A stretch of DNA of 64,000 nucleotides from Mobula hypostoma. Taxonomy: Eukaryota. This document shows, piece after piece, positions 4,145 to 46,671 of the stretch. The stretch is taken from assembly GCF_963921235.1 (NCBI RefSeq), contig NC_086106.1, positions 24,924,001 to 24,988,000 on the forward strand. The letters are read 5' to 3'. The translations under genes were made by a program, and so were the position numbers. Each line of letters opens with the position of its first letter. Position 1 is the stretch's first letter. The notes beneath the pieces are model-generated. The model was not told the DNA's origin. It saw only the letters and a list, made by a program, of their open reading frames with translations, and ran no database searches.

Positions 4145-5050
4145 CAAAGATGATTACTGACTGACATTATCTCCTTTGTCGCATAGTTACTTCGTAACAC
4201 TGCCTTTCATATTTCTGGCATCGTCTGACTCAATGTGAAAGAGCAGTTTGATGACAGTTTTCTCCAAGACGCCCTCCAGCTTCATCACCTTCGGTCACCG
4301 CCAAGCGTTACTTTGCAGATAAGGTTGACATACCAATAATTTGATCCACTTTTTACATACCTTAACCGGTTGGGAGCTGACCTTTCGAATCCTGCACGAC
4401 GTTTGAGAGCCTTTCTTTTCCGTATGTCACGGTTTTGATACTAGTGGATGTCTCTTGTGGTTAGTTGCTTCAGACAGAGTTTGTTGTAGTTTTAATGAGA
4501 CAGTCCCTTTCCATTGTATGATTACAGAATTACAGAGCCGGGGAACGTTACTGTGAAGGTTAATTTCTCCTCGGTAACTTGTTTTTCACTGTGATAACCG
4601 ACACGAATCAAAAACGCTACTTTGAAACCGGAAGCTAGTCTAGAATTGTACTGCAATATTCGAACACACTCCGGCAACCCTGCAACGACGCTTATTAAAT
4701 TTAAGGTTGCAGTTTGTTCGAGCTGTTGATTGTGATTTCTTATTCATTTAAATGTTACACTGGGGTCATCAAAACGCTGTGGTACAGTTGCTTTGTAAAA
4801 CAACCTTCCAAATAAAAAAAAAGAACAATGTTTTCAATGTAACTTATCAAGGAGGTCGTGTTCATCCAGATATGTTCCGGAACAGACAACAACGACAAAA
4901 AATGTTGCGGATTCCAACAGAGAATGTAAATCTCAAAGCGACGGATCAGACCAATGGTACGACATAACAGCAACATATACATAACCATCCTTAGACTGAT
5001 AATGTATCACAATATATTTTGCACTGAACAAGAAAAGCGCTCTCCAGATT
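4145..5050 (+). pseudogene. Decayed NAR-TCR leader-V-D-J relic (relic A, 5-prime part)
   Basis: Ordered matches to the intact cassette: agcttcatcacct (4,278) vs agcttcatctcct (28,481); donor region acctttc; intron gtttgaga and tgtggtt; FR3 relic S-L-S-I-x-D-Y-R-I-T-E-(P/S)-G..YC (Cys 4,552); CACTGTG at 4,587 and TCAAAAACG at 4,608; D relic cgctgtg-gtacagttg (4,775); weak J relic at about 4,997-5,050. FR1-FR2 deleted. Confidence 0.6.
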
Positions 5051-5449
5051 CCACGACCTCGATAGAGGGCGAACTCATCAAAATACATATTGCTGGCAAC
5101 GCACTGTGAAAATAAACCCTAACGAATGTCTGAAGGCTTAAAAGAATGATTTTTAAATATCGAGTGTTCAGCACACACGCAATGGCATTTTCTTATATAT
5201 TTTATTTATCTTTTTGCTTTTTGGTCTTTTTTGACTATGCTCACACCAAAATTTGATTACAGGACTTCTGTGCTGTTTAACATCACGGAACATTCCGCCT
5301 CAAACATTACGTTACCACAGTGGTCAATACCAAATGATGAAATTTTGAAGGGGGTGACTGAATATTGGCGAAAGACGTGTTCATATTATGATCAGACAAA
5401 ACTTCCCATCAATATCAGAAAGATGCCACCGTAGCGTGATCTGACACAG

Positions 5450-5900
5450 CAACCATAATGTCGCTGGGGATTTCAGTTACCGACTTGTAAACACACTTCT
5501 GATATATTTATTAAACATAATGACTCTCACATCGATCTTTACTATACCTCTTTCCGCACATTCACTGGTAAAAATTGTCACCCTTTCTCATTGGTTTGCA
5601 GTCTCCTCCGTGTTCCATTCTCAGTCTGATGCTTTCACTAAAAGCGAAAGAACATCTGAGATGTCATCATTCTGTAAAGTACAGCGGTTCACTTTCTCAG
5701 AAATCGATACTTCCCTCGCACTCCTCTACTCCATTTTGCATCGACTCATCGCCCTGAGAGGGATAAATTTTCCATTGTACTTACGAAACACAACCAGCAC
5801 ATCACTCCACCGAATTTCTTCTATCGTCCACAAATATATTTATAAGCACAACTTTCTCTCAACCTTTGCAATTTTTTTTTCTGCTTTCGACAGTGATCAC
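5450..5900 (+). mobile_element. Degraded Penelope-like element fragment
   Basis: SQSDAF..RTSEMSSF relic, matching the younger Penelope-like copies in this window. Confidence 0.6.
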
Positions 5901-6179
5901 CCTCTCTGTGACTCTATTGTCATGCGCATCTGCATACTGGTCTTCATGCAGTCACTTAGCTCTACCAATGGAATATCTGATGAAATAGCCCATACACCTC
6001 CTCGCTTACCACAAATCATGGTCATGGAACAGTCTTCCCAGATGATTCAGTAGTTTATCTACCTGTTTTTCGCGGGAACCATTTTTTTTCTGACGCTCCA
6101 GGCGCGGCCTAGTTTGATGCAATGAAATCCAGCTGGGTTGGTAAGCTTCGTCGTGCATCTTCGCTCTGTCCCCTAAAAC

Positions 6180-7385
6180 AAGTTCAAAGTTCAAAGAAAA
6201 TTTACGAGTAACGTATAAACATGTCACCATAATATACTGTCAGATCATTTTCTTGAGCGCATACTGTGGAAATTCATCAACTGAAATAAAGTCACTGAAA
6301 TATGGCACCCAATAGTGAAGATAANNNNNNNNNNNNNNNNNNNNNNNNNNNNNNNNNNNNNNNNNNNNNNNNNNNNNNNNNNNNNNNNNNNNNNNNNNNN
6401 NNNNNNNNNNNNNNNNNNNNNNNNNNNNNNNNNNNNNNNNNNNNNNNNNNNNNNNNNNNNNNNNNNNNNNNNNNNNNNNNNCAGAAGGAGAACAGGAAGT
6501 AGAAGTAGTAGAAGAAGAGGAAGCTGATGATGAAGGAGAAAGCGGAGAATTACGTATCGAGAACATGAAATCAATAAATCCTTGAAAGTGAGTCGATAGC
6601 TTGGAGGAACAGCTAAGTGATGTCCAAGTTATACCTCTCTGACTTAGCAGCCTGATGATTGAGAGGCAAGATGGATGCTGCTGTCCTGCGACAACGATAT
6701 GTCTATCTATGCTCAATGATGTCGAATGCTTTACTGAAGATGGACTTAGGTCTTTGAAGTACCGTTTGTAAGATGTTCCGTTTAAAAACTTTTGTGGTTT
6801 CCATATAATTCTCTGATGAAGCCTGTCAACATTACCTTAAGCAGAAGGTTGTTCATGTCAGATCCTATCTGCTCAAACTGAAGGAAGTAGAGGCGCTGCT
6901 TCCGAGGGGCAAGAAATTTAAAGTTGCTGATACTCTCTATGTCTGACTCACCTGATACGTTCTGGTACACGTCCCTCTGTTTTTCTCCACCTGAAATCAA
7001 TATTCAGCTCCTTGATCTTATTCGCAATGAATAACGTAGTATTGTCTTGACGCTATTCAGATTTCAATCTCCCTCCGTTCTACGTATTCGTTAAACTCTT
7101 GATTCGACTAAAGATATCGTCAGCAAATGTAAATATAGCAGTTGAAATAACATTAGTCATATAGTCAGAAGTGTACAGTGACTACAGTAGGGGGGCAAAG
7201 CACACAGACATGTAGTGCAACTATGCTGATGGAGATTGTGGGTGAGGTATTACTGCTAATCGGAACTGACTGGGTCTGCATGTGTGGAAATCGAGAAACC
7301 AATTACACAAGGAAGAACTGAGGTCTTGAAACGTTTTGATTAGTTCTGAGGAGATAATAATATTGAATCCCGGCATATGCTTAAA
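6180..7385 (-). mobile_element. Degraded Rex1/Babar-like LINE
   Basis: SISNFKFL..KQRLYFL..LTGFIRELYGN relic; ttcaaagttcaaag tail. Confidence 0.65.
6325..6481. other. N run (157 nt)
   Basis: Directly visible; a matching N run occurs at the paralogous site 48,849-48,997. Confidence 0.99.
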
Positions 7386-7389
7386 AGGA

Positions 7390-8760
7390 ATTATATTAAT
7401 GACTTTTAACTTAACTAATTGGTTAGCAAAGAAAAATCAACAAGAAAGGGCACACTTTAGTTAAACTGTCAAATGTTTACAGGCCGGAACTCAGCGTTTC
7501 TCCATATTCAGCAATCCTCAATCGATCATCGCTCCTGACATCACCGAATCACGGTCCCGCACCGTGTGGAATCATACGACCTGTTCTCTCCAGAGTCTTC
7601 TCTCTTCATCTCCCGGCGAAACAAAGCCCCAGGCCCAATGTTAGTGACCCTCTCTAGATAAACTTCCTCTCAGTTCTATCATCCTAACTGGATGCAACAG
7701 ATTCCTTTTCCTCCTTTGTCATCACCAATAACTCAAACATGCTGAAAACAGAAGAGATTGCTCTTACCACGGCAACATGCTATCACCCCCTCCAAAAAAA
7801 AAGTCATGTCTTCATAACTTGGAAATAATTTGTCATGGCAGCATTAATAACACAGTTTCCAAAGGAATTTTGAAAATGGTCAAAATCTCGAACCCATTTT
7901 TAATGTACTGACTTATCTCTCTGGAAGGATAGTTGTAACACTCAGCCCGGGGCTACAAAAGTCAGACTATATGGGGGTCTTCTGACAGTTTTAGAGGTCC
8001 TTATTCCATCATCTACTCTTCAGTTTCTGAAATTCTTGGGGGCACTACGAGTCCACATGGCGAGGCTTCCCCCGATCAATTACTTGCGCCTTCTGGCAAA
8101 TCCGACCGCTCAGCCACTTCGTTGAACTCAGCTTCAGTTCCGGTTACGTCAGAGCCCAGCTCGACTGCATGGTGCAGCTGCAGACCTGACTGACCGCTTT
8201 TGATGCACATGATTTCAACTGCCTAGGCGTGTGAAGTGTTGGAACTCTCTTCCTCATTTATTGGCGAGTTATAAGAAGGCAGCATGTACTACACCGTCAT
8301 TTCCTCATCCTGCGAGTCCACATCGCATTTTGAAGGGTGTGGAGAGGGCGATTGTAATCCTTTTGCTGCTGGGTCTTCAGTCTCCCGACGTCGCCACAGA
8401 GCCCATTTACTAGCTGAAAGGTCCAAGTCAGGCTTTGGGTCGACACGGATCTCTTGTCTTACCTCTTCACATTTCACATCACATCTCACTCGAAAAGGCT
8501 CCGAAGTGCTAAAATAATATTTGCCACTTTTCTTTTTGTCATACTAACTTTTATCTCCGGGGGAGGGTGACCACACAGAAGCTGATTTGTAGGGTGAGTC
8601 ACTGTAGTATAGTTCTTCAGCAACATCCGATAGTACCGCAGAGTCCAAGAAACGAGGCCTGGGCGCTCACAGTCTGGGTCCTTGGCTAGATTGTTGCAAC
8701 CCCTATCTTAGATGGATCCATATCTACTCCATGCCAGGGACTAAGTGCCCACTGAATTGG
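7390..8760 (-). mobile_element. Gypsy-like LTR retrotransposon remnant (pol C-terminal tail and probable LTR)
   Basis: Acidic tail EIRVDPKPDLD..RRRETEDPAAK..DVDSQDEE resembling post-integrase regions of fish Gypsy elements (from recall). Confidence 0.5.
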
Positions 8761-9216
8761 CAGACTTAACACGTAAACGTTGAGAACTGCCAATTCAAGT
8801 GAACAATCCATTAGTATGAAATTATTAATATCAAGGTTCTGCAGCTAGGTGGGAAATGATGAGTTTTAACTGGATAGATGGCATAGCATGATATGCTAAT
8901 ACTACAGTTAGAGGAATCACAGAATACGTTCCCCAGCAAATAGTCCTTGTTTATCATGTAAGTTTCCCTGTTATACTCACAGAGTAGTCAAACAAAACTG
9001 TCGAAATACTTTTGGTTTACTGTTGGCAGACGGGGGTGTTAGTGTGAAGAAGATGCAAACTGCAGACCTGAGCTGGTCAGTTACTCAGAGCTAGTTGAGA
9101 ATGCCTGAAGTGATCGTATTCACTTTCAACGACTGTCAGATTTGTAAATACTTACCAGGACTGAAAATGAGATTCAGTTTTCTGCTTATTTCATGACCTT
9201 ATTTGGAATGTAGCAG

Positions 9217-9537
9217 CTCCATAATATGGGGCAATTATTCACTCAAACGAATGTTTCTCAGTACACAGACAATGAGGCTGAAATGTCAACTGTTATGTCA
9301 AGGAACCTGAGAACGGAATACAACTGGAAATCACGGAAACTGCTTCATTCTTAAAGATTATCGAGTTTCCTGTCCTGTTCCGCTCAATCTATCTAACTTC
9401 ATAAGTACTGATTTATATTTATCAATTTACACAACATGAGTACACAATTTAAACGCCAGGACCTGATTACAATCTAATGATTTAAAGGTCCATACTGTGC
9501 ACAAGGGTTGGTGCAGAAACTGAGCGTTTCAAGAAAA
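9217..9537 (+). pseudogene. Decayed TCR V relic, probably the supporting V of relic A
   Basis: TGT at 9,291, N-G-I-(H)-W with Trp at 9,325 (intact V: N-T-I-H-W), LQSND-LKVH-YC relic with Cys at 9,496; RSS relic CACAAGG - 22 nt - TCAAGAAAA (9,500-9,537); multiple stops and frameshifts. Confidence 0.5.
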
Positions 9538-12330: not shown

Positions 12331-12602
12331 CCAAGAAGGGTCAGAGCCATCTCTATTTTCTGAGGAGACTGAGGTCCTTTAACATCTGTCGGACGATGCT
12401 GAGGATGTTCTGCAAGTCTGTGTTGACCAGTGCTATCATATTTGCTGTTGTGTGCTGGGGCAGCAGGCCTGAGGGTAGCAGACTCCAACAGAATCAACAA
12501 ACCCATTAGTAAGGCCAGTGATGTTGTGGAGATGGAACTGGACTCTCTGACAGTGGTGTCGGAAAAGAGGATGCTGTCCAAGTTGAATGCCATCTTGAAC
12601 AA
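12330..12602 (+). mobile_element. Rex1/Babar-like LINE 3-prime fragment
   Basis: KKGQSHLYFLRRLRSFNICRTMLRMF..VVCWGS. Confidence 0.8.
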
Positions 12603-13617
12603 TGACCCTGGTTCCTCTGGTCCTCACCTACCACCCCACCAGCCTCCGGGTCCAACATATTATTCTCCGTAACTTCCGCCACCTCCAACGGGATCCCACC
12701 ACTAAGCACATCTTTCCCTCTCCCCCTCTCTCTGCATTCCGCAGGGATCGCTCCCTACACAACTCCTTTGTCCATTCGTCACCCCCATCCCTCCCCACTG
12801 ATCTCCCTCCTGGCACTTATCTGTGTAAGCGGAACAAGTGCTACACATGCCCTTACACTTCCTCCCTTACCACCATTCAGGGCCCCAAACAGTCCTTCCA
12901 GGTGAGGCATCACTTCACCTGTGAGTCGACTGGGGTGATATACTGCGTCCGGTGCTCCCGATGTGGCCTTTTATATATTGGTGAGACCCGACGCAGACTG
13001 GGAGACCGCTTTGCTGAACATCTACGCTCTGTCCGCCAGAGAAAGCAGGATCTCCCAGTGGCCACACATTTTAATTCCACATCCCATTCCCATTCTGACA
13101 TGTATATCCACGGCCTCCTCTACTGTAAAGATGAAGCCACACTCAGGTTGGAGGAACAACACCTTATATTCCGTCTGGATAGCCTCCAACCTGATGGCAT
13201 GAACATTGACTTCTCTAACTTCCGCTAGGCCCCACCTCCCCCTCGTACCCCAGCTGTTACTCCTTTTTATGCACACATTCTTTCTCTCACTCTCCTTTTT
13301 CTCCCTCTGTCCCTCTGAATATACCTCTTGCCCATCCTCTGGGTCACCCCCCCCCGTCTTTCTCCCTAGGCCTCCTGTCCCATGATCCTCTCGTATCCCC
13401 TTTTGCCTATCACCTGTCCAGCTCTCGGCTCTATCCCTCCCCCTCCTGTCTTCTCCTATCATTTTGCATCTCCCCCTCCCCCTCCAGCTTTCAAATCCCT
13501 TACTCACTCTTCCTTCAGTTAGTCCTGACGAAGGGTCTCGGCCTGAAACGTCGACTGCGCCTCTTCCTATAGATGCTGCTTGGCCTGCTGCGTTCACCAG
13601 CAACTTTGATGTATGCA
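12603..13617 (+). mobile_element. Young Penelope-like element (GIY-YIG endonuclease end)
   Basis: Open 208-aa frame with VIYCVRCSRCGLLYIGETRRRLGDRFAEH; absent from the paralogous site at about 55,125. Confidence 0.9.
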
Positions 13618-28522: not shown

Positions 28523-28565
28523 ATGGGAGTCTTCTTTGTTTTCACACTCTGGCTCTGCTTACGGA
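28523..28565 (+). CDS. NTCR: NAR-TCR V leader exon (MGVFFVFTLWLCLR + 1 nt)
   Basis: ATG in strong Kozak context (acgATGG); 14 hydrophobic codons plus 1 nt; donor a|GTGAGT at 28,566. Phase-1 splicing to 28,703 gives MGVFFVFTLWLCLRSSLS-QSVTQ. Confidence 0.92.
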
Positions 28566-28702
28566 GTGAGTACCTTTCACACATCCACATTACAGTAACT
28601 TTAAATCTGTTTGAGACCTCTGAGCTTCAACCGGCTTAAATTATTCATGTGGTTCGTCTGTGACTGCAATTCACATTTCTCCGTATTTTTTTTTATTCTT
28701 AG

Positions 28703-28993
28703 GTTCATTGAGTCAGTCGGTGACTCAGGACCCGGCCATTGTAAACTTGAATGAGTGTCAGACTGCCACTATCACCTGCAGTTTCAAGCCTGGCTCTGGT
28801 GAATATCGCTTTCTCACTGGAAAATTCTTCAGGCAGACCAACTCAACGGCCGAACGCAAAGAAGTCACCCGCGGGGGCAGATTTTTTACTTTGATTAAGA
28901 AAACTAACATGCAGTTTACTTTGGCAATTCGGGACCTGCAGGTGGAAGACAGCGGCACCTATTACTGTCAAGCTGTGTACAGATGGCGTGAAG
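28703..28993 (+). CDS. NTCR: NAR-TCR variable exon (IgNAR-like V domain with CDR2 deletion)
   Basis: Acceptor ttttattcttAG ending at 28,702. Open frame SLSQSVTQDPAIVNLNECQTATITCSFKPGSGEYRFLTGKFFRQTNSTAERKEVTRGGRFFTLIKKTNMQFTLAIRDLQVEDSGTYYCQAVYRWRE. Canonical Cys at 28,777 and 28,966 only 63 codons apart; GGRF and DLQVEDSGTYYC motifs resemble VNAR; extra Cys at 28,756; followed directly by an RSS. Confidence 0.93.
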
Positions 28994-29031
28994 CACAATG
29001 ATGGGCTTCTGCTTCGCGCTGTACAAAAACA
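28994..29031 (+). other. V recombination signal sequence (23-class, 22-nt spacer)
   Basis: CACAATG - 22 nt (atgggcttctgcttcgcgctgt) - ACAAAAACA. Confidence 0.93.
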
Positions 29032-29353
29032 TTCGCTGTAGCTTATTTCTGATTCAGACGGAGCAGAATGGATCTGCGGGTAAACTCATCTTCCTGTCTC
29101 GCTGTGGATAGTCCTGCAGTCCAGCAAACTGTCAGTTGTTTTATTTTTTTCTGTAGAGTCTTTATGTTCCCACCTCGCGTGTGAGCAGATATTGTTGCCG
29201 ACCTGAGGTATGTGTCAATAAATGTCGACAGATGTTGAAAAATACACATTCTTGACACCGACGGGAGACAGAATCATTCCTGAACACTTGGAACCAGTAA
29301 ACGCCAGCGCTGCGAAATTAATTCCTGCTCGACTGTGTCATTGACTCGCCAGC

Positions 29354-29381
29354 AGATTTCAAATTCACGTAAGGTACTGTG
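29354..29381 (-). other. D 5-prime 12-RSS (weak nonamer)
   Basis: AGATTTCAA - 12 nt - TACTGTG directly before the D; heptamer 6/7, nonamer only 4/9 of consensus. Confidence 0.7.
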
Positions 29382-29396
29382 TACAGTTGGAACGAA
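29382..29396 (+). CDS. NTCR: NAR-TCR D segment (15 nt, TACAGTTGGAACGAA)
   Basis: Flanked by TACTGTG and CACAGTG heptamers; lies between the V and the J. Confidence 0.9.
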
Positions 29397-29424
29397 CACA
29401 GTGGAAGAGATCTGAACAAAAATA
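29397..29424 (+). other. D 3-prime 12-RSS
   Basis: CACAGTG - 12 nt (gaagagatctga) - ACAAAAATA. Confidence 0.93.
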
Positions 29425-29772
29425 GAAAATAATAAATATATAAATAACTCATTGTTTAAACGAGTTATTCTCCATATCGCATACAAAAAAATACAAACCT
29501 AGCGTTGTTCACGTTCTAATCTGTTTAGATTATTTTTAATTTCCATATTGCATATGTATTTTTGATTGACACGTATGCTGTGTGTTTTTTTCCTTCTCGG
29601 AATCGGTGTGCGGTGCGTGTTCCGATTTTATTCTAATTTGGTTTTGCTTTCTCACAAAGAACATATCGACCTGCCGGCAAATGGGGAATATTCTTGCTAT
29701 GTGTTGCATTAACAACTCTGGAAACATTGGGAATCCTATTGTAGCGTTACCTAAGCGGATTCACGTGAGTGT

Positions 29773-29811
29773 AGTTGTTGTATAGTGGAGACCGAGAACA
29801 GGATCATTGTG
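29773..29811 (-). other. J 23-RSS
   Basis: AGTTGTTGT - 23 nt - CATTGTG directly before the J coding sequence. Confidence 0.88.
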
Positions 29812-29869
29812 TATCAATGGGAGACTCATACTCTAGATGGAACAGGGACAAAGGTCACGGTCAGGCCCG
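29812..29869 (+). CDS. NTCR: NAR-TCR J segment (YQWETHTLDGTGTKVTVRP)
   Basis: Open frame with an IgNAR-type DGxGTxVTV motif; phase-1 donor G|GTAAGT at 29,870. Confidence 0.92.
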
Positions 29870-30894
29870 GTAAGTATCCACAGACACCGACGATTCCTCA
29901 AATATCTCACCCATTTTCACTATCGTTTGATAGATGATCGATTGATTTAAAATCTTGTGTGGTGTGATTCTGTAAACTGAATCTACACTCACTGCGACGA
30001 AAGGGAAGGTGGTAAACTGAATTAACAGAGTGAGATGGAGAGGGGAATGTCTGCTATACGTAAAGATGAAATGCTGGTGTAATCGTCGCAGAATAAATCC
30101 AACCGACTGATGTCAGACTGTGGGAAATACTGTAGGCAGCTTAAGGCATAAACCGCAAGCAGATAAGATATATATGTATATATGAAAATGTCACCGACAC
30201 GCAAGAAATAATGAATCTTGTTTTCTCCAATTTATTTTCAAATAGTACAGTGAGATGGAGAACCAATTGATGAAAAATAAGAAAAGAGAAGGGAAGATAA
30301 CATTTATATAGCCGCGTGCTAAACTCCAATTGAAAATAATATTCGTCTTCAGTTGCTCAGAAAATTATCCGACCAATGTGTCCCATTCAGTCTCATTACT
30401 GTGAAGAACATGTTACAATGCAAGAGGTTGTAACTTATCGGGGATATGTTATTTAAAAAAAAACAAGAAGCAATTCTGGATGGAGGCTCTATCAATTCGA
30501 AAAATAAAACAGGCAAATCCATCATTATTCCGCATGAAACTGGCGTTTAAAATAAACACCGCAGAACTTATATATAAAATAAGGCGTTCGGCCCATTTTA
30601 TGATTGTAGGCCCTCTGCAATTATTCCATGAAATTAGTTCTTCCTTCCACATAGATGTCCAAAATATGAAACATGTTTTGATAATAGAAAGATATCGCTA
30701 TTTAGCATGAGTCCCTGATTTTATTTCACTGCAGCAATTCAGATAATAATTGACAACGACAATAAATATTGTTTACTCACATTTCAAATGAAACAAGATT
30801 GCGTGAAAGCAAACTCTCCTTAACGTATTTGGGACGTGTTATTTTCCGACAGTTGTCGGTAAATCAGCAATAATTTTCCTTTGCATTCATACAG

Positions 30895-31197
30895 AATCTA
30901 TTGCTCCACCGTCTCAGAGTCCGGAACTACAAACTACACTTGCCGATACTGCCATTTTAACCTGTGGATATGACGTGAATTGTCGCAACACAATACACTG
31001 GTATGTCCAGCTTCCAGGGCAGGCACCCATATTCCTGCTCCAGGGTCAAACTTCCGGAGTACAAGATAAGACAAAAAATGCCGGGGAACGAATTACTGGT
31101 TTTGTCGATCCTGGTAAGAAAATCAGCCAACTGACGATCTCCAAAGTGCAACTGGGTGACGCTGCTGTGTATTACTGTGCAATGAGTCGGTTTGCAG
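30895..31197 (+). CDS. TRDV: Leaderless supporting TCR-delta V exon
   Basis: Acceptor ttttcctttgcattcatacAG ending at 30,894, phase-compatible with the J. Translation ESIAPPSQSPELQTTLADTAILTCGYDVNCRNTIHWYVQLPGQAPIFLLQGQTSGVQDKTKNAGERITGFVDPGKKISQLTISKVQLGDAAVYYCAMSRFA. Cys 30,963, Trp 30,999, Cys 31,176, extra CDR1 Cys 30,981. No leader exon seen in the 1,025-nt intron. Confidence 0.92.
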
Positions 31198-31236
31198 CAC
31201 TGTGATGCCGCGCATGGACAGCGCTGTTCAAGAACT
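31198..31236 (+). other. Supporting V 23-RSS
   Basis: CACTGTG - 23 nt - TCAAGAACT. Confidence 0.88.
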
Positions 31237-31258
31237 AGAGTGATTCTGGTTACAAGCA

Positions 31259-31297
31259 CACAGTGCTAGGAAGCAGCGAGAGAACAATACAAAAACT
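31259..31297 (+). other. Orphan near-consensus 23-RSS
   Basis: CACAGTG - 23 nt (ctaggaagcagcgagagaacaat) - ACAAAAACT, starting 22 nt after the supporting V nonamer. Confidence 0.85.
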
Positions 31298-31899
31298 CAT
31301 TTGGTTTTATCATATAAATACACCACAGCCGAGCACGGAGACAACGGCAAGAAACCGCAGTGTGGTGGGATTTTAGCAGAATGATAACAGAGAAAATAGA
31401 AGTACCACAAACAACACCCAAAATATGCTGGGAGAAATCATTATGTCCTGATGGAAGTTCTTGGTTCGAAACATCATTTTCATGGAAGTGACCGGATCTA
31501 CCGATTCCTCAAATTTCCACTTATTGAAGACACACACATTTCAAGAATATATTCCTGGAGCAGAGAGGCATGATTGCCTTAAGGAAATTCGCATTTTAGA
31601 TCAGAAGTGCGTCAGGCATAGCAACAGAAGTGGGCAAATCAGCCTATCCATTGTGGCCCGCCATTCCATTATTATTGTTTCCGGTTCCCAGTACATTCTC
31701 CAGTATATCCATGTGGGACATGCAATCTACCAGCCATTTTGAGTGAAGGAACATCGCAAATCCGTTTGCGCCGCGTGAACGTCGGCAGAAAAGCAACGGA
31801 CATTGAAATGTTACAAATTCCAAACAATAAATGCGTAATCTATTGTTTTGGAATTATACGGTATCACCAACTACAGGTATCATTACAATTCCAGAAACA

Positions 31900-42755: not shown

Positions 42756-43765
42756 TGTCATGGTCAGGTCCGTGAAGTCTGTATTCCGGCTCACGGACTG
42801 GTCCATTGACCCTTGCTCCAGGTTTTTCTGTCTACCCTGGAACCACCCTGTACCTAGTTCCTTCCTGTTTCGTGCCTCCGTAGGGTAAGCCAGTCCGTCA
42901 CACTGTTACCTGCGGTTGGTTCTGTTCCTTCCTGTCCCTTGCCTCCGTCGGGTAAGCCAGGCCGTCTCGCCGTTACCTGCGGTTGGTTCTGTCCCTTCCT
43001 GTCCCATGCCTTCGTCGGGTTTTGAACCGCGCCCAGCCCAGGAGTATCGCGCCCTGACCAGGAGTACCGCTCCCTGACAAGCAGTACCGCGCCCTGACTC
43101 GGAGTATCGCGCCCTGCCCAGGTGAACGGCGCCCTGCCTCGGAGGAGCCTACCTAGCTTCAAGCCTGAAGACTCCAGTCTCCTGCCTAGCCTCAAGCCTG
43201 AAGCCTGCAGCCTCGCCTCAAGCCTCCGGCCTAGCCGCAAGCCTGAAGACTCCAGCCTACAGCCTCGTCTCAAGTCTACTGCCTTCAGCCTTGCCTCGCC
43301 TCAAAACTCACGCCTGCAGCCTGCCCCGCCTCAAGTATCCTGCCTCCAGCTTCGCCTCGCCCCAAGTCTCTGTCCTCCTGCTAAGCCTCGCTTCATGTCT
43401 CCTGCCTCCCCCAAGCCTCGCTTCAAGTCTCTTGCCTCCTGCCAAACCTCGCCTGAAGTCTCTCGGCTCAAGCCAAGCCTCCCCTCAAGTTTCTAAGACT
43501 CCAGCCTCGCCCTGCCTGCCAGTCAAGCCTCGTCCCGGCCTCGTTCTTGGGTCCGAGCCAGAGGCAAGACCCAGGTACTGGGTCCTTGTCCAGACTCTGG
43601 CTCGGAGTCGAAGCCCGGGCTCCGAGATCTTTTGTCCAGTCCTGTTCCGGGTTCCCGGTTTTCCTATCTATGTCGTTTCCATCGCCCTGTATCCTAGTCC
43701 TGTACCTAGTACTTCAGTGTCTGTGTCTTGCACTGCGGTCCGTTCCCAGCCACCGCTTCATGACA
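42756..43765 (+). mobile_element. Solo LTR with 5-bp target-site duplication
   Basis: TGTCATG...CATGACA termini; flanks GAAAG (42,751-42,755) and GGAAG (43,766-43,770). Confidence 0.85.
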
Positions 43766-44067
43766 GGAAGAGCATGTTTGACAAATCTTAATGAATTTTT
43801 TGAACAGCTTACTAGAAAAGTTGAAGAGGGTAAAGCGGTGCATTTTATCTATATGGACTTCAGTACGAACTTTGACAAGGTTCCACACGGAAGGTTATTT
43901 AGGAAGGTTCTATCGTTCGGTATTAATCTTGAATTAGCAAAATGGATTCAGCAGTGGCTGGATGGGAGACCCCAGATATTAGTGGTGGATAACTGTTTGT
44001 CACATTGGAGACCGGTGTCTAGTGGTGTCCCTCCCTCAGTGATCTGCACTGTGTCCAGTGTTGTTTG

Positions 44068-44107
<40 letters not shown>
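44068..44107 (+). repeat. (TA)n microsatellite
   Basis: Directly visible. Confidence 0.95.
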
Positions 44108-44110
<3 letters not shown>

Positions 44111-46671
44111 TGATCTTGGAGTATTGTGTACAGTTTTGGTCACTGAATTATAGGAAAAATGTCAACAAAATTGAGAGAGTAGAGGGAAGAATTACCAGAA
44201 TGTTACGTGGCTTTCATCTCCTAAGTTAGAGAGCAAGGTTGAACAAGCTGGGTATTAACACTTTGGAGCATAGAACGTTAAGGGAGGACTTGATAGAGGT
44301 ATTTAAAATCATGAGTGGGTAAGATAGAGTTGACGTGGATAGTTTTTTTTCGAGTGAGTGTGGGGGAGATTCAAACAAGAGGATATGAGTTGAGAGTTAA
44401 AGGGCAAAATATTAAGAGTAACATGAGTGGTAAAGTCTTTACTCAGAGACTGGAAAGAGCTTCCAGCAGAAGTGGTTGGGGCAGATTCGATGTTGTCATT
44501 TAAAGTTAAATTGGATAACGATATAGATAGGAAATGACTGCAGGGTGATGGGGTGAGTGCAGGTCGGTGGGACTAGGTGAAAGTAAGAGTTCGGTACGGA
44601 CTAAAAGATCCGAGATTGCCTGTTTCCGTGCTGTAATTGTTATATGGTTATACAGCTCATAATTAGCTGATACGTACAAATTCACTAGTACAATTGCTGT
44701 ATCTACCGCGCGGGCCAGTCATTGGTTTTGACACCCCAATTGAAAAATGGAGATAACAGATTTGATAAGTTTAAATCAAATGTATTATCAAATTGCGCAC
44801 GTCTCACATTTGTCCTTGACATTCTGATGTCTAATTTCCTTATTTGAGTCATCAGTGCATTGCAATGTATAACAATTATGATGCATTGCAATAAAAAGTG
44901 TATATATAATAAACAAAAAAATAGCTGTATAGAAAGTTAGCGGGGAGATACTAATGGACTGTATTGGGCTCATGGTCAACACGGAAATCTGACGGCAACG
45001 GGGAAACAACTCTTTCTGACAAGTTAAATGTGAGGACATATCCTCTCTGATGGTGGCTGGGGTGGAGTCTTCAGTGATTCATGCGGTCCTTTGGAAGTAT
45101 CGCCTTTTGAAGGTACCCTGGATGCCTGGGAGTGTTGTGTCAATGATGAAGCTTGCTGTGTTTAAAATGTTCTGCCGTTTGCTCCTGTGCAGCTGCCCCA
45201 CTATCCCAGACACAGATGCAACCAGTTATAATGCTGCCCACTGTTTATCTCTGGAAATTACCGTGAGTATTTGATGGAAACCAGTTTTCAAGTTTCATGT
45301 GACATTCCGCCGCTGTAATGCCTTCTTTATAATTGTGCCCAGTATAAATCCACAGTACTGTCAATAGTCACGCATTTGAAATTGCTCATCCTTTCATTTC
45401 TTTCCCCGATAACGTTTGGTTTGTCTTCCATCCGCTTCCATTCCTGAAGTTCAAAATGAATTTTGGTCTTACTAAGAGTACAGTCAAGTAGCTGATCTCT
45501 ATAGCTGCCATATGCCTCTTCGTCACTATCTGAAATTATGGAAACAATATTTTTTGGTCGTGAAATTTATCGATGGTGTTAGAGTTGAGCCAAGCCACAG
45601 CATCGTGCTTGTAGTAAGGGTCGATGATTGGGTATGGTTGAAGTGCGGCAATGTTGCTCGTCATCAAGGATGAGATGTATGTTATTTCCAATGCGTACAC
45701 CTGGTGGTCGCCCATTTAAGAGATCCAGTCCAGTTGCGCGGGGAGGTATTAACTCCCAGGTTTTGAGCGTATTGATTAAAGCTGAGTTCTGCTGATGGCT
45801 GAGCAGAAAGGCATCCCAAACCTGATTTTTTTTAAATACAAAATTAAATGTGAAAAGGAAGTCTTAAGTACCGGATGAAAAGTTGACACAACTGATTGTT
45901 TTATTCCCCAGACATTTTGTCTTATTTTCACTTGCGACAGAGTTGTGGTGACAATCATGAAACTATCAGGAAATATTTTTTTTCATTTTCCTAATTTAGA
46001 GACATTTGAGAATGTTGCAGATAAGGAATGCATCATTTGGATTTTACATGATTGAAACTTCAGTACAGATATAACTGTGTATCAGCAGAACTCATATCTT
46101 GAATGTGTTGATACCTGCATTTTGTACTAGATTTTCAGTAACTCTAGCCGTGGATATTCACATCTACCGTGAAGAAACATAAACACCTGCTGCAGCTCTT
46201 CTATTTCCGCCTTTGCATCATACTTGAATTGGGTAATATTTTTACGCAAAAAAAAGCAGAACGCTGTATAACAGCAGAGCTCGAGCTTGTTTAGCGGGCT
46301 CTTGTACATCTTCGTGTGCAGGTTGAATCTAGCAGACATCTGAGAAGAAGATAGAAAATATAAATTCTCCCATATTCCGTGGTTTACAAGATAACATGAC
46401 GCACTGGGAAAGCCCATCCCATAGATTGCCCAGTAAGCAGTGTCTACAAACACTCGGTGGCACTGGACACAACTGCACAAAATAAACTCTGGGCTTTCTT
46501 CATGTTTCAAAGACGACTACACAAATAATAAACGCAATCATCTTCTCAATAAATTCTTAAGTTATTCAGAGAAAAGCTAAATTCGCAGAAACCAATGGGA
46601 GACGAAAAAATATTGTGTGCCAGAAGTTTTAGCTCGTGTCTGATCTCTCTTATGTTCTGGATGATATCGAT

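What the first reader, a model, noticed from the sequence alone, without database searches (positions are those of the whole stretch)
28523..31236. Intact doubly rearranging NAR-TCR cassette (L-VNAR-like-D-J plus leaderless supporting V-delta)
Seen in sequence: every element needed for two rearrangements is present and in phase, with V(22)-(12)D(12)-(23)J followed by J splicing (phase 1, G+AA = Glu) onto a second V that has its own 23-RSS and no leader. Established knowledge: this architecture defines NAR-TCR, described in nurse shark, in which an antibody-like VNAR domain sits on top of a TCR-delta chain. Inference: this is a functional germline cassette, possibly from a ray, a lineage where I am not aware of detailed NAR-TCR genomic descriptions.
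Basis: partly seen in the sequence, partly recalled or inferred. Interest (0 to 1): 0.9.

Follow-up and report, generated by a model that had tools for sequence, protein, structure and literature searches.

The report
Intact ray NAR-TCR double-V cassette
This is an apparently intact germline copy of the known shark and ray "NAR-TCR" gene unit, in which an antibody-like V domain with its own D and J is spliced onto a leaderless T-cell-receptor delta V domain; the unit is ordinary for cartilaginous fish, and its one less familiar feature is a repeated recombination signal behind the second V.

Summary
The elements run in order and in phase on the + strand:
- leader, 28523-28565;
- NAR-type V exon, 28703-28993, with a 22-spacer RSS;
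- one 15-nt D, 29382-29396, between 12-spacer RSSs;
- J, 29812-29869, with a 23-spacer RSS and a phase-1 donor;
- a 1,025-nt intron;
- a leaderless V exon, 30895-31197, with a 23-spacer RSS.

The three strongest RSS matches in the 64 kb all lie in or directly behind this unit; 0.1 are expected by chance.

All sequence hallmarks of NAR-TCR that could be tested are met. The same design, including the 22-nt spacer, the single D and the phase-1 J donor, is present in sawfish, thorny skate, catshark, epaulette, horn and whale shark loci. Both V domains group with batoid copies in trees.

More than 60 RefSeq double-V models exist, including ones from skates, sawfish and a devil ray. A 2025 paper maps NARTCR V in a stingray. 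This is therefore a new member of a known kind.

The scan has logged about 93 NAR-TCR notes elsewhere in this same genome.

Not shown: transcripts, the link to C-delta, and which RSS is used. The supporting V is followed by tandem ~61-nt RSS units in all eight cassettes examined. I found no description of this in the papers I could read.

The parts
28523..28565 (+). Leader exon (MGVFFVFTLWLCLR + 1 nt), donor GTGAGT at 28566, phase 1
   Evidence: It aligns with the leaders of shark double-V models.
28703..28993 (+). NAR-type V exon, with the a-b loop Cys (NEC), FFRQ instead of WYRK, GGRF and YYCQA
   Evidence: translation. Pfam V-set E 2e-9. The best single-domain PDB hits are shark VNARs. It is 52-60% identical to sawfish NAR-TCR V.
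28994..29031 (+). V RSS CACAATG-22-ACAAAAACA
   Evidence: The 22-nt spacer is found in all seven comparison cassettes as well.
29354..29381 (+). 5' D RSS: AGATTTCAA-12-TACTGTG (weak nonamer)
   Evidence: Homologous weak 5' D RSSs occur in the other species.
29382..29396 (+). Single D segment, 15 nt, open in all three frames
   Evidence: All five comparison cassettes checked for this have one D of 15-16 nt at the same spacing.
29397..29424 (+). 3' D RSS CACAGTG-12-ACAAAAATA
29773..29811 (+). J RSS AGTTGTTGT-23-CATTGTG
29812..29869 (+). J segment (YQWETHTLDGTGTKVTVRP + G), donor GTAAGT at 29870, phase 1
   Evidence: It aligns with DGSGTVVTVTA of the shark models.
29870..30894 (+). Intron between J and the supporting V; no leader exon inside it
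30895..31197 (+). Leaderless supporting TCR-delta-type V exon, with Cys in CDR1 (VNCRNT)
   Evidence: Pfam V-set E 2e-11. It is 56-62% identical to sawfish supporting V and sits in a 100/100 clade with the supporting Vs.
31198..31236 (+). Proximal 23-RSS CACTGTG-23-TCAAGAACT (12/16), at the position homologous to the V RSS of other species
31259..31297 (+). Distal 23-RSS CACAGTG-23-ACAAAAACT (15/16), the second ~61-nt unit of a tandem RSS repeat. Its use would leave the in-frame stop TGA at 31203-31205.

Best explanation
This is an intact germline NAR-TCR cassette inside the TCR alpha/delta region of a batoid (ray-like) genome.

Shown by the sequence:
- One transcription unit on the + strand holds a leader, a NAR-type V, one D, one J and a leaderless TCR-delta-type V.
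- The RSS spacers obey the 12/23 rule: V 22, D 12/12, J 23, second V 23.
- The J donor and the second V acceptor are both phase 1, so the reading frame continues across them.

Inferred from the known family:
1. In thymocytes RAG joins D to J and then V to DJ inside the cassette.
2. Independently, RAG joins the second V to TCR-delta D-J segments elsewhere in the locus.
3. The primary transcript is spliced leader / NAR VDJ / supporting VDJ / C-delta.
4. The result is a three-domain delta chain with an unpaired antibody-like V on top. The top V is probably tied to the supporting V by a disulfide between the a-b loop Cys and the CDR1 Cys.
For: - Anatomy and phases.
- No leader for the second V.
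- Both exons are V-set.
- The first V is closest to VNAR among solved single domains.
- The best relatives in 1.84 billion representatives are elasmobranch proteins carrying both V types 25-35 residues apart; a Mustelus model continues into a TCR C domain and TM.
- 60+ such double-V models exist, including ones from five batoid genera.
- The two extra Cys and FFRQ are near-invariant.
- Germline loci of sawfish (x2), skate, catshark, epaulette, horn and whale shark have the same order, the same 22-nt V spacer and ~400-nt V-D-J spacing. The five of them checked for D and J each have a single 15-16-nt D and a phase-1 J donor.
- The only strong RSSs in 64 kb lie in or directly behind the cassette, 3 against 0.1 expected.
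- Trees put both domains with batoid copies (96/94, 97/93 and 93/84).
- The family criteria come from PMC1845163.
Against: - No transcript evidence for this copy.
- No D-delta, J-delta or C-delta lies in the window. Unchecked scan notes put a TCR-delta D-J block 4.47 Mb away, at lower coordinates, with orientation unknown.
- The supporting V's proximal RSS is only 12/16 (nonamer 6/9). A 15/16 RSS sits 61 nt downstream, and using it would leave an in-frame stop.
- The 5' D nonamer is weak (4/9), though it is weak in most other species too.
- The single IgNAR V available did not separate from the NAR-TCR Vs in the tree.
- The interdomain disulfide is inferred only. The AlphaFold model was moderate and no coordinates could be read.
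Confidence: 0.85

Rival explanations
1. The cassette is structurally intact but recombines poorly or is effectively silent. RAG would prefer the consensus distal 23-RSS (31259), giving joins that keep 61 nt with an in-frame stop, so this copy would seldom yield a productive delta chain.
For: The proximal RSS scores 12/16 and the distal 15/16. The stop TGA at 31203-31205 is in the V frame, by direct reading. One catshark copy has a crippled proximal heptamer, AACAGTG. The genome holds many cassettes, so individual copies may drift.
Against: All coding parts, splice sites and the other RSSs are intact. The proximal heptamer keeps CAC and sits at the position homologous to the functional V RSS of other species. 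Tandem units follow the supporting V in every species examined, including cassettes with gene models, so the arrangement is compatible with use.
Confidence: 0.12
2. It is an IgNAR (antibody) heavy-chain V cluster, or another Ig cluster, rather than a TCR component.
For: The first V resembles VNAR domains. The one IgNAR V included in the tree is not separated from the NAR-TCR Vs.
Against: There is one D, not three. J is followed by a V exon, not C exons. The a-b loop Cys and Phe in place of Trp are the NAR-TCR state, whereas VNAR 2C02 has GES...WYRK. Identity is 29% to VNAR 2C02 by BLASTP, against 45-60% to NAR-TCR Vs. No Ig C exon was noticed anywhere in the window; the eight longest ORFs scanned gave only transposon domains or nothing, and no dedicated C-domain scan was made.
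Confidence: 0.02
3. It is a chance juxtaposition of two Ig-superfamily exons with RSS-like strings.
For: None beyond the general abundance of CAC..TG strings.
Against: Three strong RSSs against 0.1 expected. The layout is the same, element for element, in seven cassettes of six other species.
Confidence: 0.01

Closest known systems
NAR-TCR (NAR-TcR) of nurse shark and other cartilaginous fish (Criscitiello, Saltis and Flajnik 2006, PNAS; summarised in PMC1845163, PMC5931798, PMC12227049)
   Same: L-V-D-J followed by a leaderless supporting delta V with its own RSS. Cys in the a-b loop and no WYRK Trp in the NAR V. Cys in CDR1 of the supporting V. J spliced to the second V.
   Different: It is a batoid copy, only 45-62% identical to any copy in the databases searched, on a long branch. 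The proximal supporting-V RSS is weaker than the second unit behind it.
RefSeq double-V gene models of batoids (Pristis pectinata XP_051882926 and others; Amblyraja radiata, Leucoraja erinacea, Rhinoraja longicauda, Mobula hypostoma)
   Same: The same two domains in the same order with the same J-to-V junction (..TVTA|DSIS.. against ..TVRP|ESIA..). The sawfish and skate loci show the same germline layout.
   Different: The models carry uninformative automatic names ('uncharacterized', 'kappa light chain-like', 'Ig heavy chain Mem5-like'). The best identity is 60% (NAR V) and 62% (supporting V).
IgNAR V (VNAR) of sharks
   Same: The V domain family is the same: GGRF/GGRY, the FSL.I.DL..ED..TY.C motifs, and a single-domain type.
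   Different: From my own knowledge, IgNAR has three Ds and constant exons after J. Its V keeps the Trp and lacks the a-b loop Cys. Here there is one D and a second V after J.
TCR mu of marsupials and monotremes, and VH-delta-using TCR delta of frogs, birds and coelacanth (PMC3457774, PMC7615758)
   Same: An antibody-like V is used on a TCR delta-like chain. TCR mu also has two V domains.
   Different: They belong to other lineages. From my own knowledge, in marsupial TCR mu the second V is pre-joined in the germline; here the second V still rearranges.

Membership tests
NAR-TCR | First V has a split leader; second V has no leader and starts at a splice acceptor | tested here: met
NAR-TCR | First V has its own D and J with 12/23-compatible RSSs inside the cassette | tested here: met
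   V 22, D 12/12, J 23.
NAR-TCR | J ends in a splice donor that is in phase with the second V exon | tested here: met
   both are phase 1, G+AA gives Glu, and the frame stays open.
NAR-TCR | NAR V has a Cys in the a-b loop and lacks the Trp of WYRK (PMC1845163) | tested here: met
   NEC...ITC and KFFRQ. E17/C18 and F41/F42 are invariant or nearly so in alignment A2.
NAR-TCR | Supporting delta V has a Cys in CDR1 (PMC1845163) | tested here: met
   VNCRNT aligns with SGFCQYT.
NAR-TCR | Supporting V carries its own 23-RSS for joining to TCR-delta D | tested here: met
   The proximal RSS scores 12/16 and a second RSS 61 nt downstream scores 15/16.
NAR-TCR | Both V domains are homologous to NAR-TCR V and supporting V of other cartilaginous fish | tested here: met
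NAR-TCR | Linked to TCR-delta D, J and C and expressed as a delta chain | not testable with these tools
   No D-delta, J-delta or C-delta is in the window. The only evidence is unchecked scan notes. A Mustelus homologue model does run into a TCR C domain and TM.
NAR-TCR | Doubly rearranged transcripts L-VDJ-VDJ-C | not testable with these tools
   No RNA data for this genome.
IgNAR heavy-chain cluster | Three D segments, with constant exons after J; V with Trp in WYRK and no a-b loop Cys | tested here: not met
TCR mu | Second V pre-joined in the germline (no RSS); mammalian lineage | tested here: not met
   The second V has RSSs. The trees place the cassette in batoids.

The most novel reading that the evidence does not exclude
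The tandem ~61-nt RSS units behind the supporting V may be a conserved working part of NAR-TCR rather than junk. Each unit is a heptamer, a 23-nt spacer, a nonamer and a ~22-nt linker.

Copy numbers seen: 2 units here, 2-3 in sawfish and skate, 3 in horn shark and whale shark, 4 in epaulette shark, and about 9 in catshark.

A join made at a distal unit keeps the proximal 23-RSSs upstream of the joint. Those could then recombine again with a downstream 12-RSS (another D-delta or a J-delta). A chain that needs two in-frame rearrangements would thereby get repeated tries. Alternatively, the units could serve as a landing pad for RAG.
Probability: 0.2. Interest if true: 0.65.

Novelty: new member of a known kind. 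Interest (0 to 1): 0.35.

Why it matters
The cassette adds a fully resolved germline NAR-TCR unit from a divergent batoid lineage. It shows that the design has been held from sharks to rays: a 22-nt V spacer, a single D, a phase-1 J donor and the paired extra cysteines. Scan notes suggest that the same genome carries many such cassettes over several megabases, which would make NAR-TCR a large share of the delta V repertoire in this ray. The repeated RSS behind the supporting V, seen in all seven species, is a concrete and testable feature of how the second rearrangement is targeted.

Tried and rejected
- The word-index search with the NAR V alone found nothing. The exhaustive representative search and a profile search were needed instead.
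- Thorny skate 'hemicentin-2-like' P0002 scored high but is a true multi-I-set protein with no tblastn match to either V. I dropped it.
- Only one labelled IgNAR V (VNAR 2C02) could be retrieved, so the tree cannot separate IgNAR from NAR-TCR Vs. The call rests on the diagnostic residues and on the linkage to a supporting V.
- The AlphaFold model of the Mustelus two-V part was moderate (pLDDT 74, pTM 0.52). No coordinates were available, so the Cys-Cys distance was not measured.
- The Foldseek PDB search returned only scFv-like two-V chains at TM ~0.35, which is uninformative.
- Criscitiello 2006 and Ott 2021 are not held in the library. I therefore could not check whether they mention the tandem RSSs, and a text search found no such description.
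- The elephant shark locus is not on record, and Mobula DNA was not retrievable.
- No other V relic was found in the window by tblastn with 13 double-V models at E<=0.05 or by blastn.
- The species could not be named.
Full report
**Observation**

- The leader exon runs 28523-28565 (MGVFFVFTLWLCLR plus one base) and ends at a GTGAGT donor.
- After a 137-nt intron with a long pyrimidine tract, the first V exon (28703-28993) is open. It carries both canonical cysteines and ends ...YYCQAVYRWRE.
- Its RSS is CACAATG-22-ACAAAAACA.
- About 400 nt on lies one D of 15 nt (29382-29396), open in all frames. It has a 12-spacer RSS on each side: the 3' one is near consensus, and the 5' nonamer is weak.
- About 400 nt further on lies a J (29812-29869, ...LDGTGTKVTVRP), preceded by AGTTGTTGT-23-CATTGTG and ending in G|GTAAGT, phase 1.
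- After a 1,025-nt intron a second V exon starts directly at a cag acceptor (30895). The G of J plus AA makes Glu, and the frame stays open to ...YYCAMSRFA.
- It is followed by CACTGTG-23-TCAAGAACT (31198-31236).

A search for a hidden leader exon between J and the second V found only three short candidates with poor donors. The same search picks out the true leader of the first V cleanly.

RSS matches of at least 14/16 to consensus occur three times in the 64 kb, against 0.1 in shuffles: the NAR V RSS, the D 3' RSS and the second RSS behind the supporting V. This is the only such cassette in the window by tblastn and blastn.

**What it is**

Both exons are V-set domains. Among solved structures, the best single-domain matches of the first V are shark VNARs; the second V matches V domains in general, including human V-delta-1.

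An exhaustive HMMER search of 1.84 billion representatives, with names, gave elasmobranch predicted proteins as the closest relatives. They come from horn shark, basking shark, sawfish, catshark, smooth-hound, whale shark, epaulette shark and bamboo shark.

In each of these proteins the NAR-type V is followed 25-35 residues later by a domain 45-56% identical to the window's second V. One Mustelus model continues into a TCR constant domain and a transmembrane segment.

A profile search found more than 60 such double-V models of about 230 residues. They include models from the batoids Pristis, Amblyraja, Leucoraja, Rhinoraja and Mobula.

The alignments show the features that PMC1845163, citing Criscitiello et al. 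2006, gives as diagnostic:
- a normal leader on the first V;
- a Cys in the a-b loop (NEC...ITC);
- Phe instead of the Trp of WYRK (KFFRQ);
- no leader on the second V;
- a Cys in CDR1 of the second V (VNCRNT).

The one IgNAR V retrieved (VNAR 2C02) has the opposite states, GES...WYRK.

**Comparative genomics**

I fetched the germline DNA under seven of these models: sawfish L001 and L008, thorny skate L007, catshark L002, epaulette shark L003, horn shark L005 and whale shark L006.
- All seven have the window's order of elements, and the NAR V RSS has a 22-nt spacer in every one.
- V, D and J lie about 400 nt apart in each.
- In the five loci where I read the D and J regions (L001, L002, L003, L005, L006), there is a single D of 15-16 nt, and the J has a 23-spacer RSS and a phase-1 donor.
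- The supporting V RSS sits at the same codon position.

The weak 5' D nonamer is shared by most species, so it is not a sign of decay in this copy.

**Origin**

In a tree of single domains, each window domain is sister to the sawfish domain (96/94 and 97/93), inside 100/100 clades for NAR-type Vs and for supporting Vs. In a tree of the two domains concatenated, the window groups with a set of sawfish cassettes (93/84), among the batoid sequences and outside the 100/100 shark clade.
- Its branch is long, like that of Mobula.
- The best identities are 60% (NAR V) and 62% (supporting V).
- The source is therefore a batoid not closely related to any species with models in the collection. I could not name it.

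**How it most likely works**

Shown: the parts, their 12/23 compatibility, the matching splice phases and the conserved extra cysteines.

Inferred from the family:
1. RAG joins D to J and V to DJ within the cassette.
2. RAG separately joins the supporting V to TCR-delta D-J.
3. Splicing gives leader / NAR VDJ / supporting VDJ / C-delta, a three-domain delta chain with an unpaired NAR V on top.
4. The top V is probably tied to the supporting V by a disulfide between the two extra cysteines.

I could not test the disulfide. The AlphaFold model of the Mustelus two-V part was moderate (pLDDT 74) and no coordinates are exposed. The fold search gave only scFv-like chains.

**Caveats**

- No D-delta, J-delta or C-delta lies in the window.
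- Earlier scan notes, which I did not check, place a TCR-delta D-J block 4.47 Mb away at lower coordinates. They list about 93 NAR-TCR notes spread over several megabases of this genome, with cassettes 15 kb before and 6.7 kb after this window.
- Whether a cassette on this strand reaches the D-J block by deletion or by inversion needs the full assembly.
- There is no expression evidence for this copy.

**The tandem RSS**

Sixty-one nucleotides behind the proximal supporting-V RSS (12/16 to consensus) lies a second 23-RSS, CACAGTG-23-ACAAAAACT (15/16; 31259-31297). A join made there would keep the stop TGA at 31203-31205 in the V frame.

This is not peculiar to this copy. Every cassette examined has tandem units of about 59-63 nt after the supporting V.
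- Each unit is a heptamer, a 23-nt spacer, a nonamer and a ~22-nt linker.
- Catshark has about 9 units (TRF 9.3 copies, 91% matches).
- Epaulette shark has 4, and horn shark and whale shark have 3 each.
- Sawfish and skate have 2-3, with the distal ones partly decayed.
- The units are homologous across species, sharing ...GCACGGAGAGAGCTGT ACAAAAACC TGAACATGGTG...

The NAR V RSSs and the one conventional V in the fetched loci have no second unit: their best score is 7-9/16, against 11-15/16 behind supporting Vs.

I found no description of this in the papers I could search or read. The two most relevant papers are not held in the library.

The array may be a neutral minisatellite kept alive by its first copy. 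It may instead give RAG repeated tries. That second reading is the novel case, at low probability.

**Comparison and novelty**

The cassette meets every sequence-level criterion of NAR-TCR. It fails the criteria for IgNAR (one D, no C exons, the residue states) and for TCR mu (the second V still has RSSs, and the lineage differs).
- NAR-TCR has been known since 2006 in elasmobranchs and since 2007 in a chimaera (PMC1845163).
- PMC12227049 maps NARTCR V in four elasmobranch assemblies, including the Atlantic stingray.
- RefSeq already holds unnamed batoid models.

This is therefore a new member of a known kind. It is well preserved and divergent, and its interest is modest apart from the RSS array.

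**Surroundings**

The rest of the window is transposon-rich, with a Penelope-like GIY-YIG ORF and a reverse-transcriptase fragment. It has three N runs, which I left untouched. No further V-like sequence was detected.

Noticed in passing
window 31198-31319; L002 19817-20380; L003 8080-8384; L005 11131-11319; L006 20532-20714; L001 11502-11623; L007 7803-7925; L008 8444-8566: The supporting V of NAR-TCR cassettes is followed by tandem ~59-63-nt units, each a full 23-RSS plus a linker. There are 2 units in this ray and about 9 in catshark. The units are homologous across sharks and batoids. They are absent behind the NAR Vs and behind one conventional sawfish V.
   Followed up: yes
window 28994-29031 and the NAR V RSS in L001, L002, L003, L005, L006, L007, L008: The NAR V RSS spacer is 22 nt, not 23, in all eight cassettes from seven species.
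   Followed up: yes
L005 3852-4127 and 4977-5252 (horn shark): Two further NAR-type V copies lie between a complete V-D-J set and the supporting V, with no strong RSS next to them. The gene model reads V...DGSGTVVTITA twice. These may be germline-joined NAR VDJ copies.
   Followed up: no
window 4145-9537: An earlier scan note calls this stretch a fossil NAR-TCR cassette split by transposons. Neither tblastn with the two window V domains (E<=10) or 13 double-V models (E<=0.05), nor blastn with the cassette, finds V-like similarity there. An N run lies at 6325-6481.
   Followed up: partly
window 12602-13228 and 43547-44113: One ORF has a weak GIY-YIG match (22.4 bits, just under Pfam's cut-off) and another matches reverse transcriptase. 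These are probably Penelope-like or LINE transposon remains around the cassette.
   Followed up: partly
L002 19816 (catshark): In this catshark cassette the RSS unit directly after the supporting V has the heptamer AACAGTG, while the next units have CACAGTG. This copy may be impaired, or it may depend on a distal unit.
   Followed up: no
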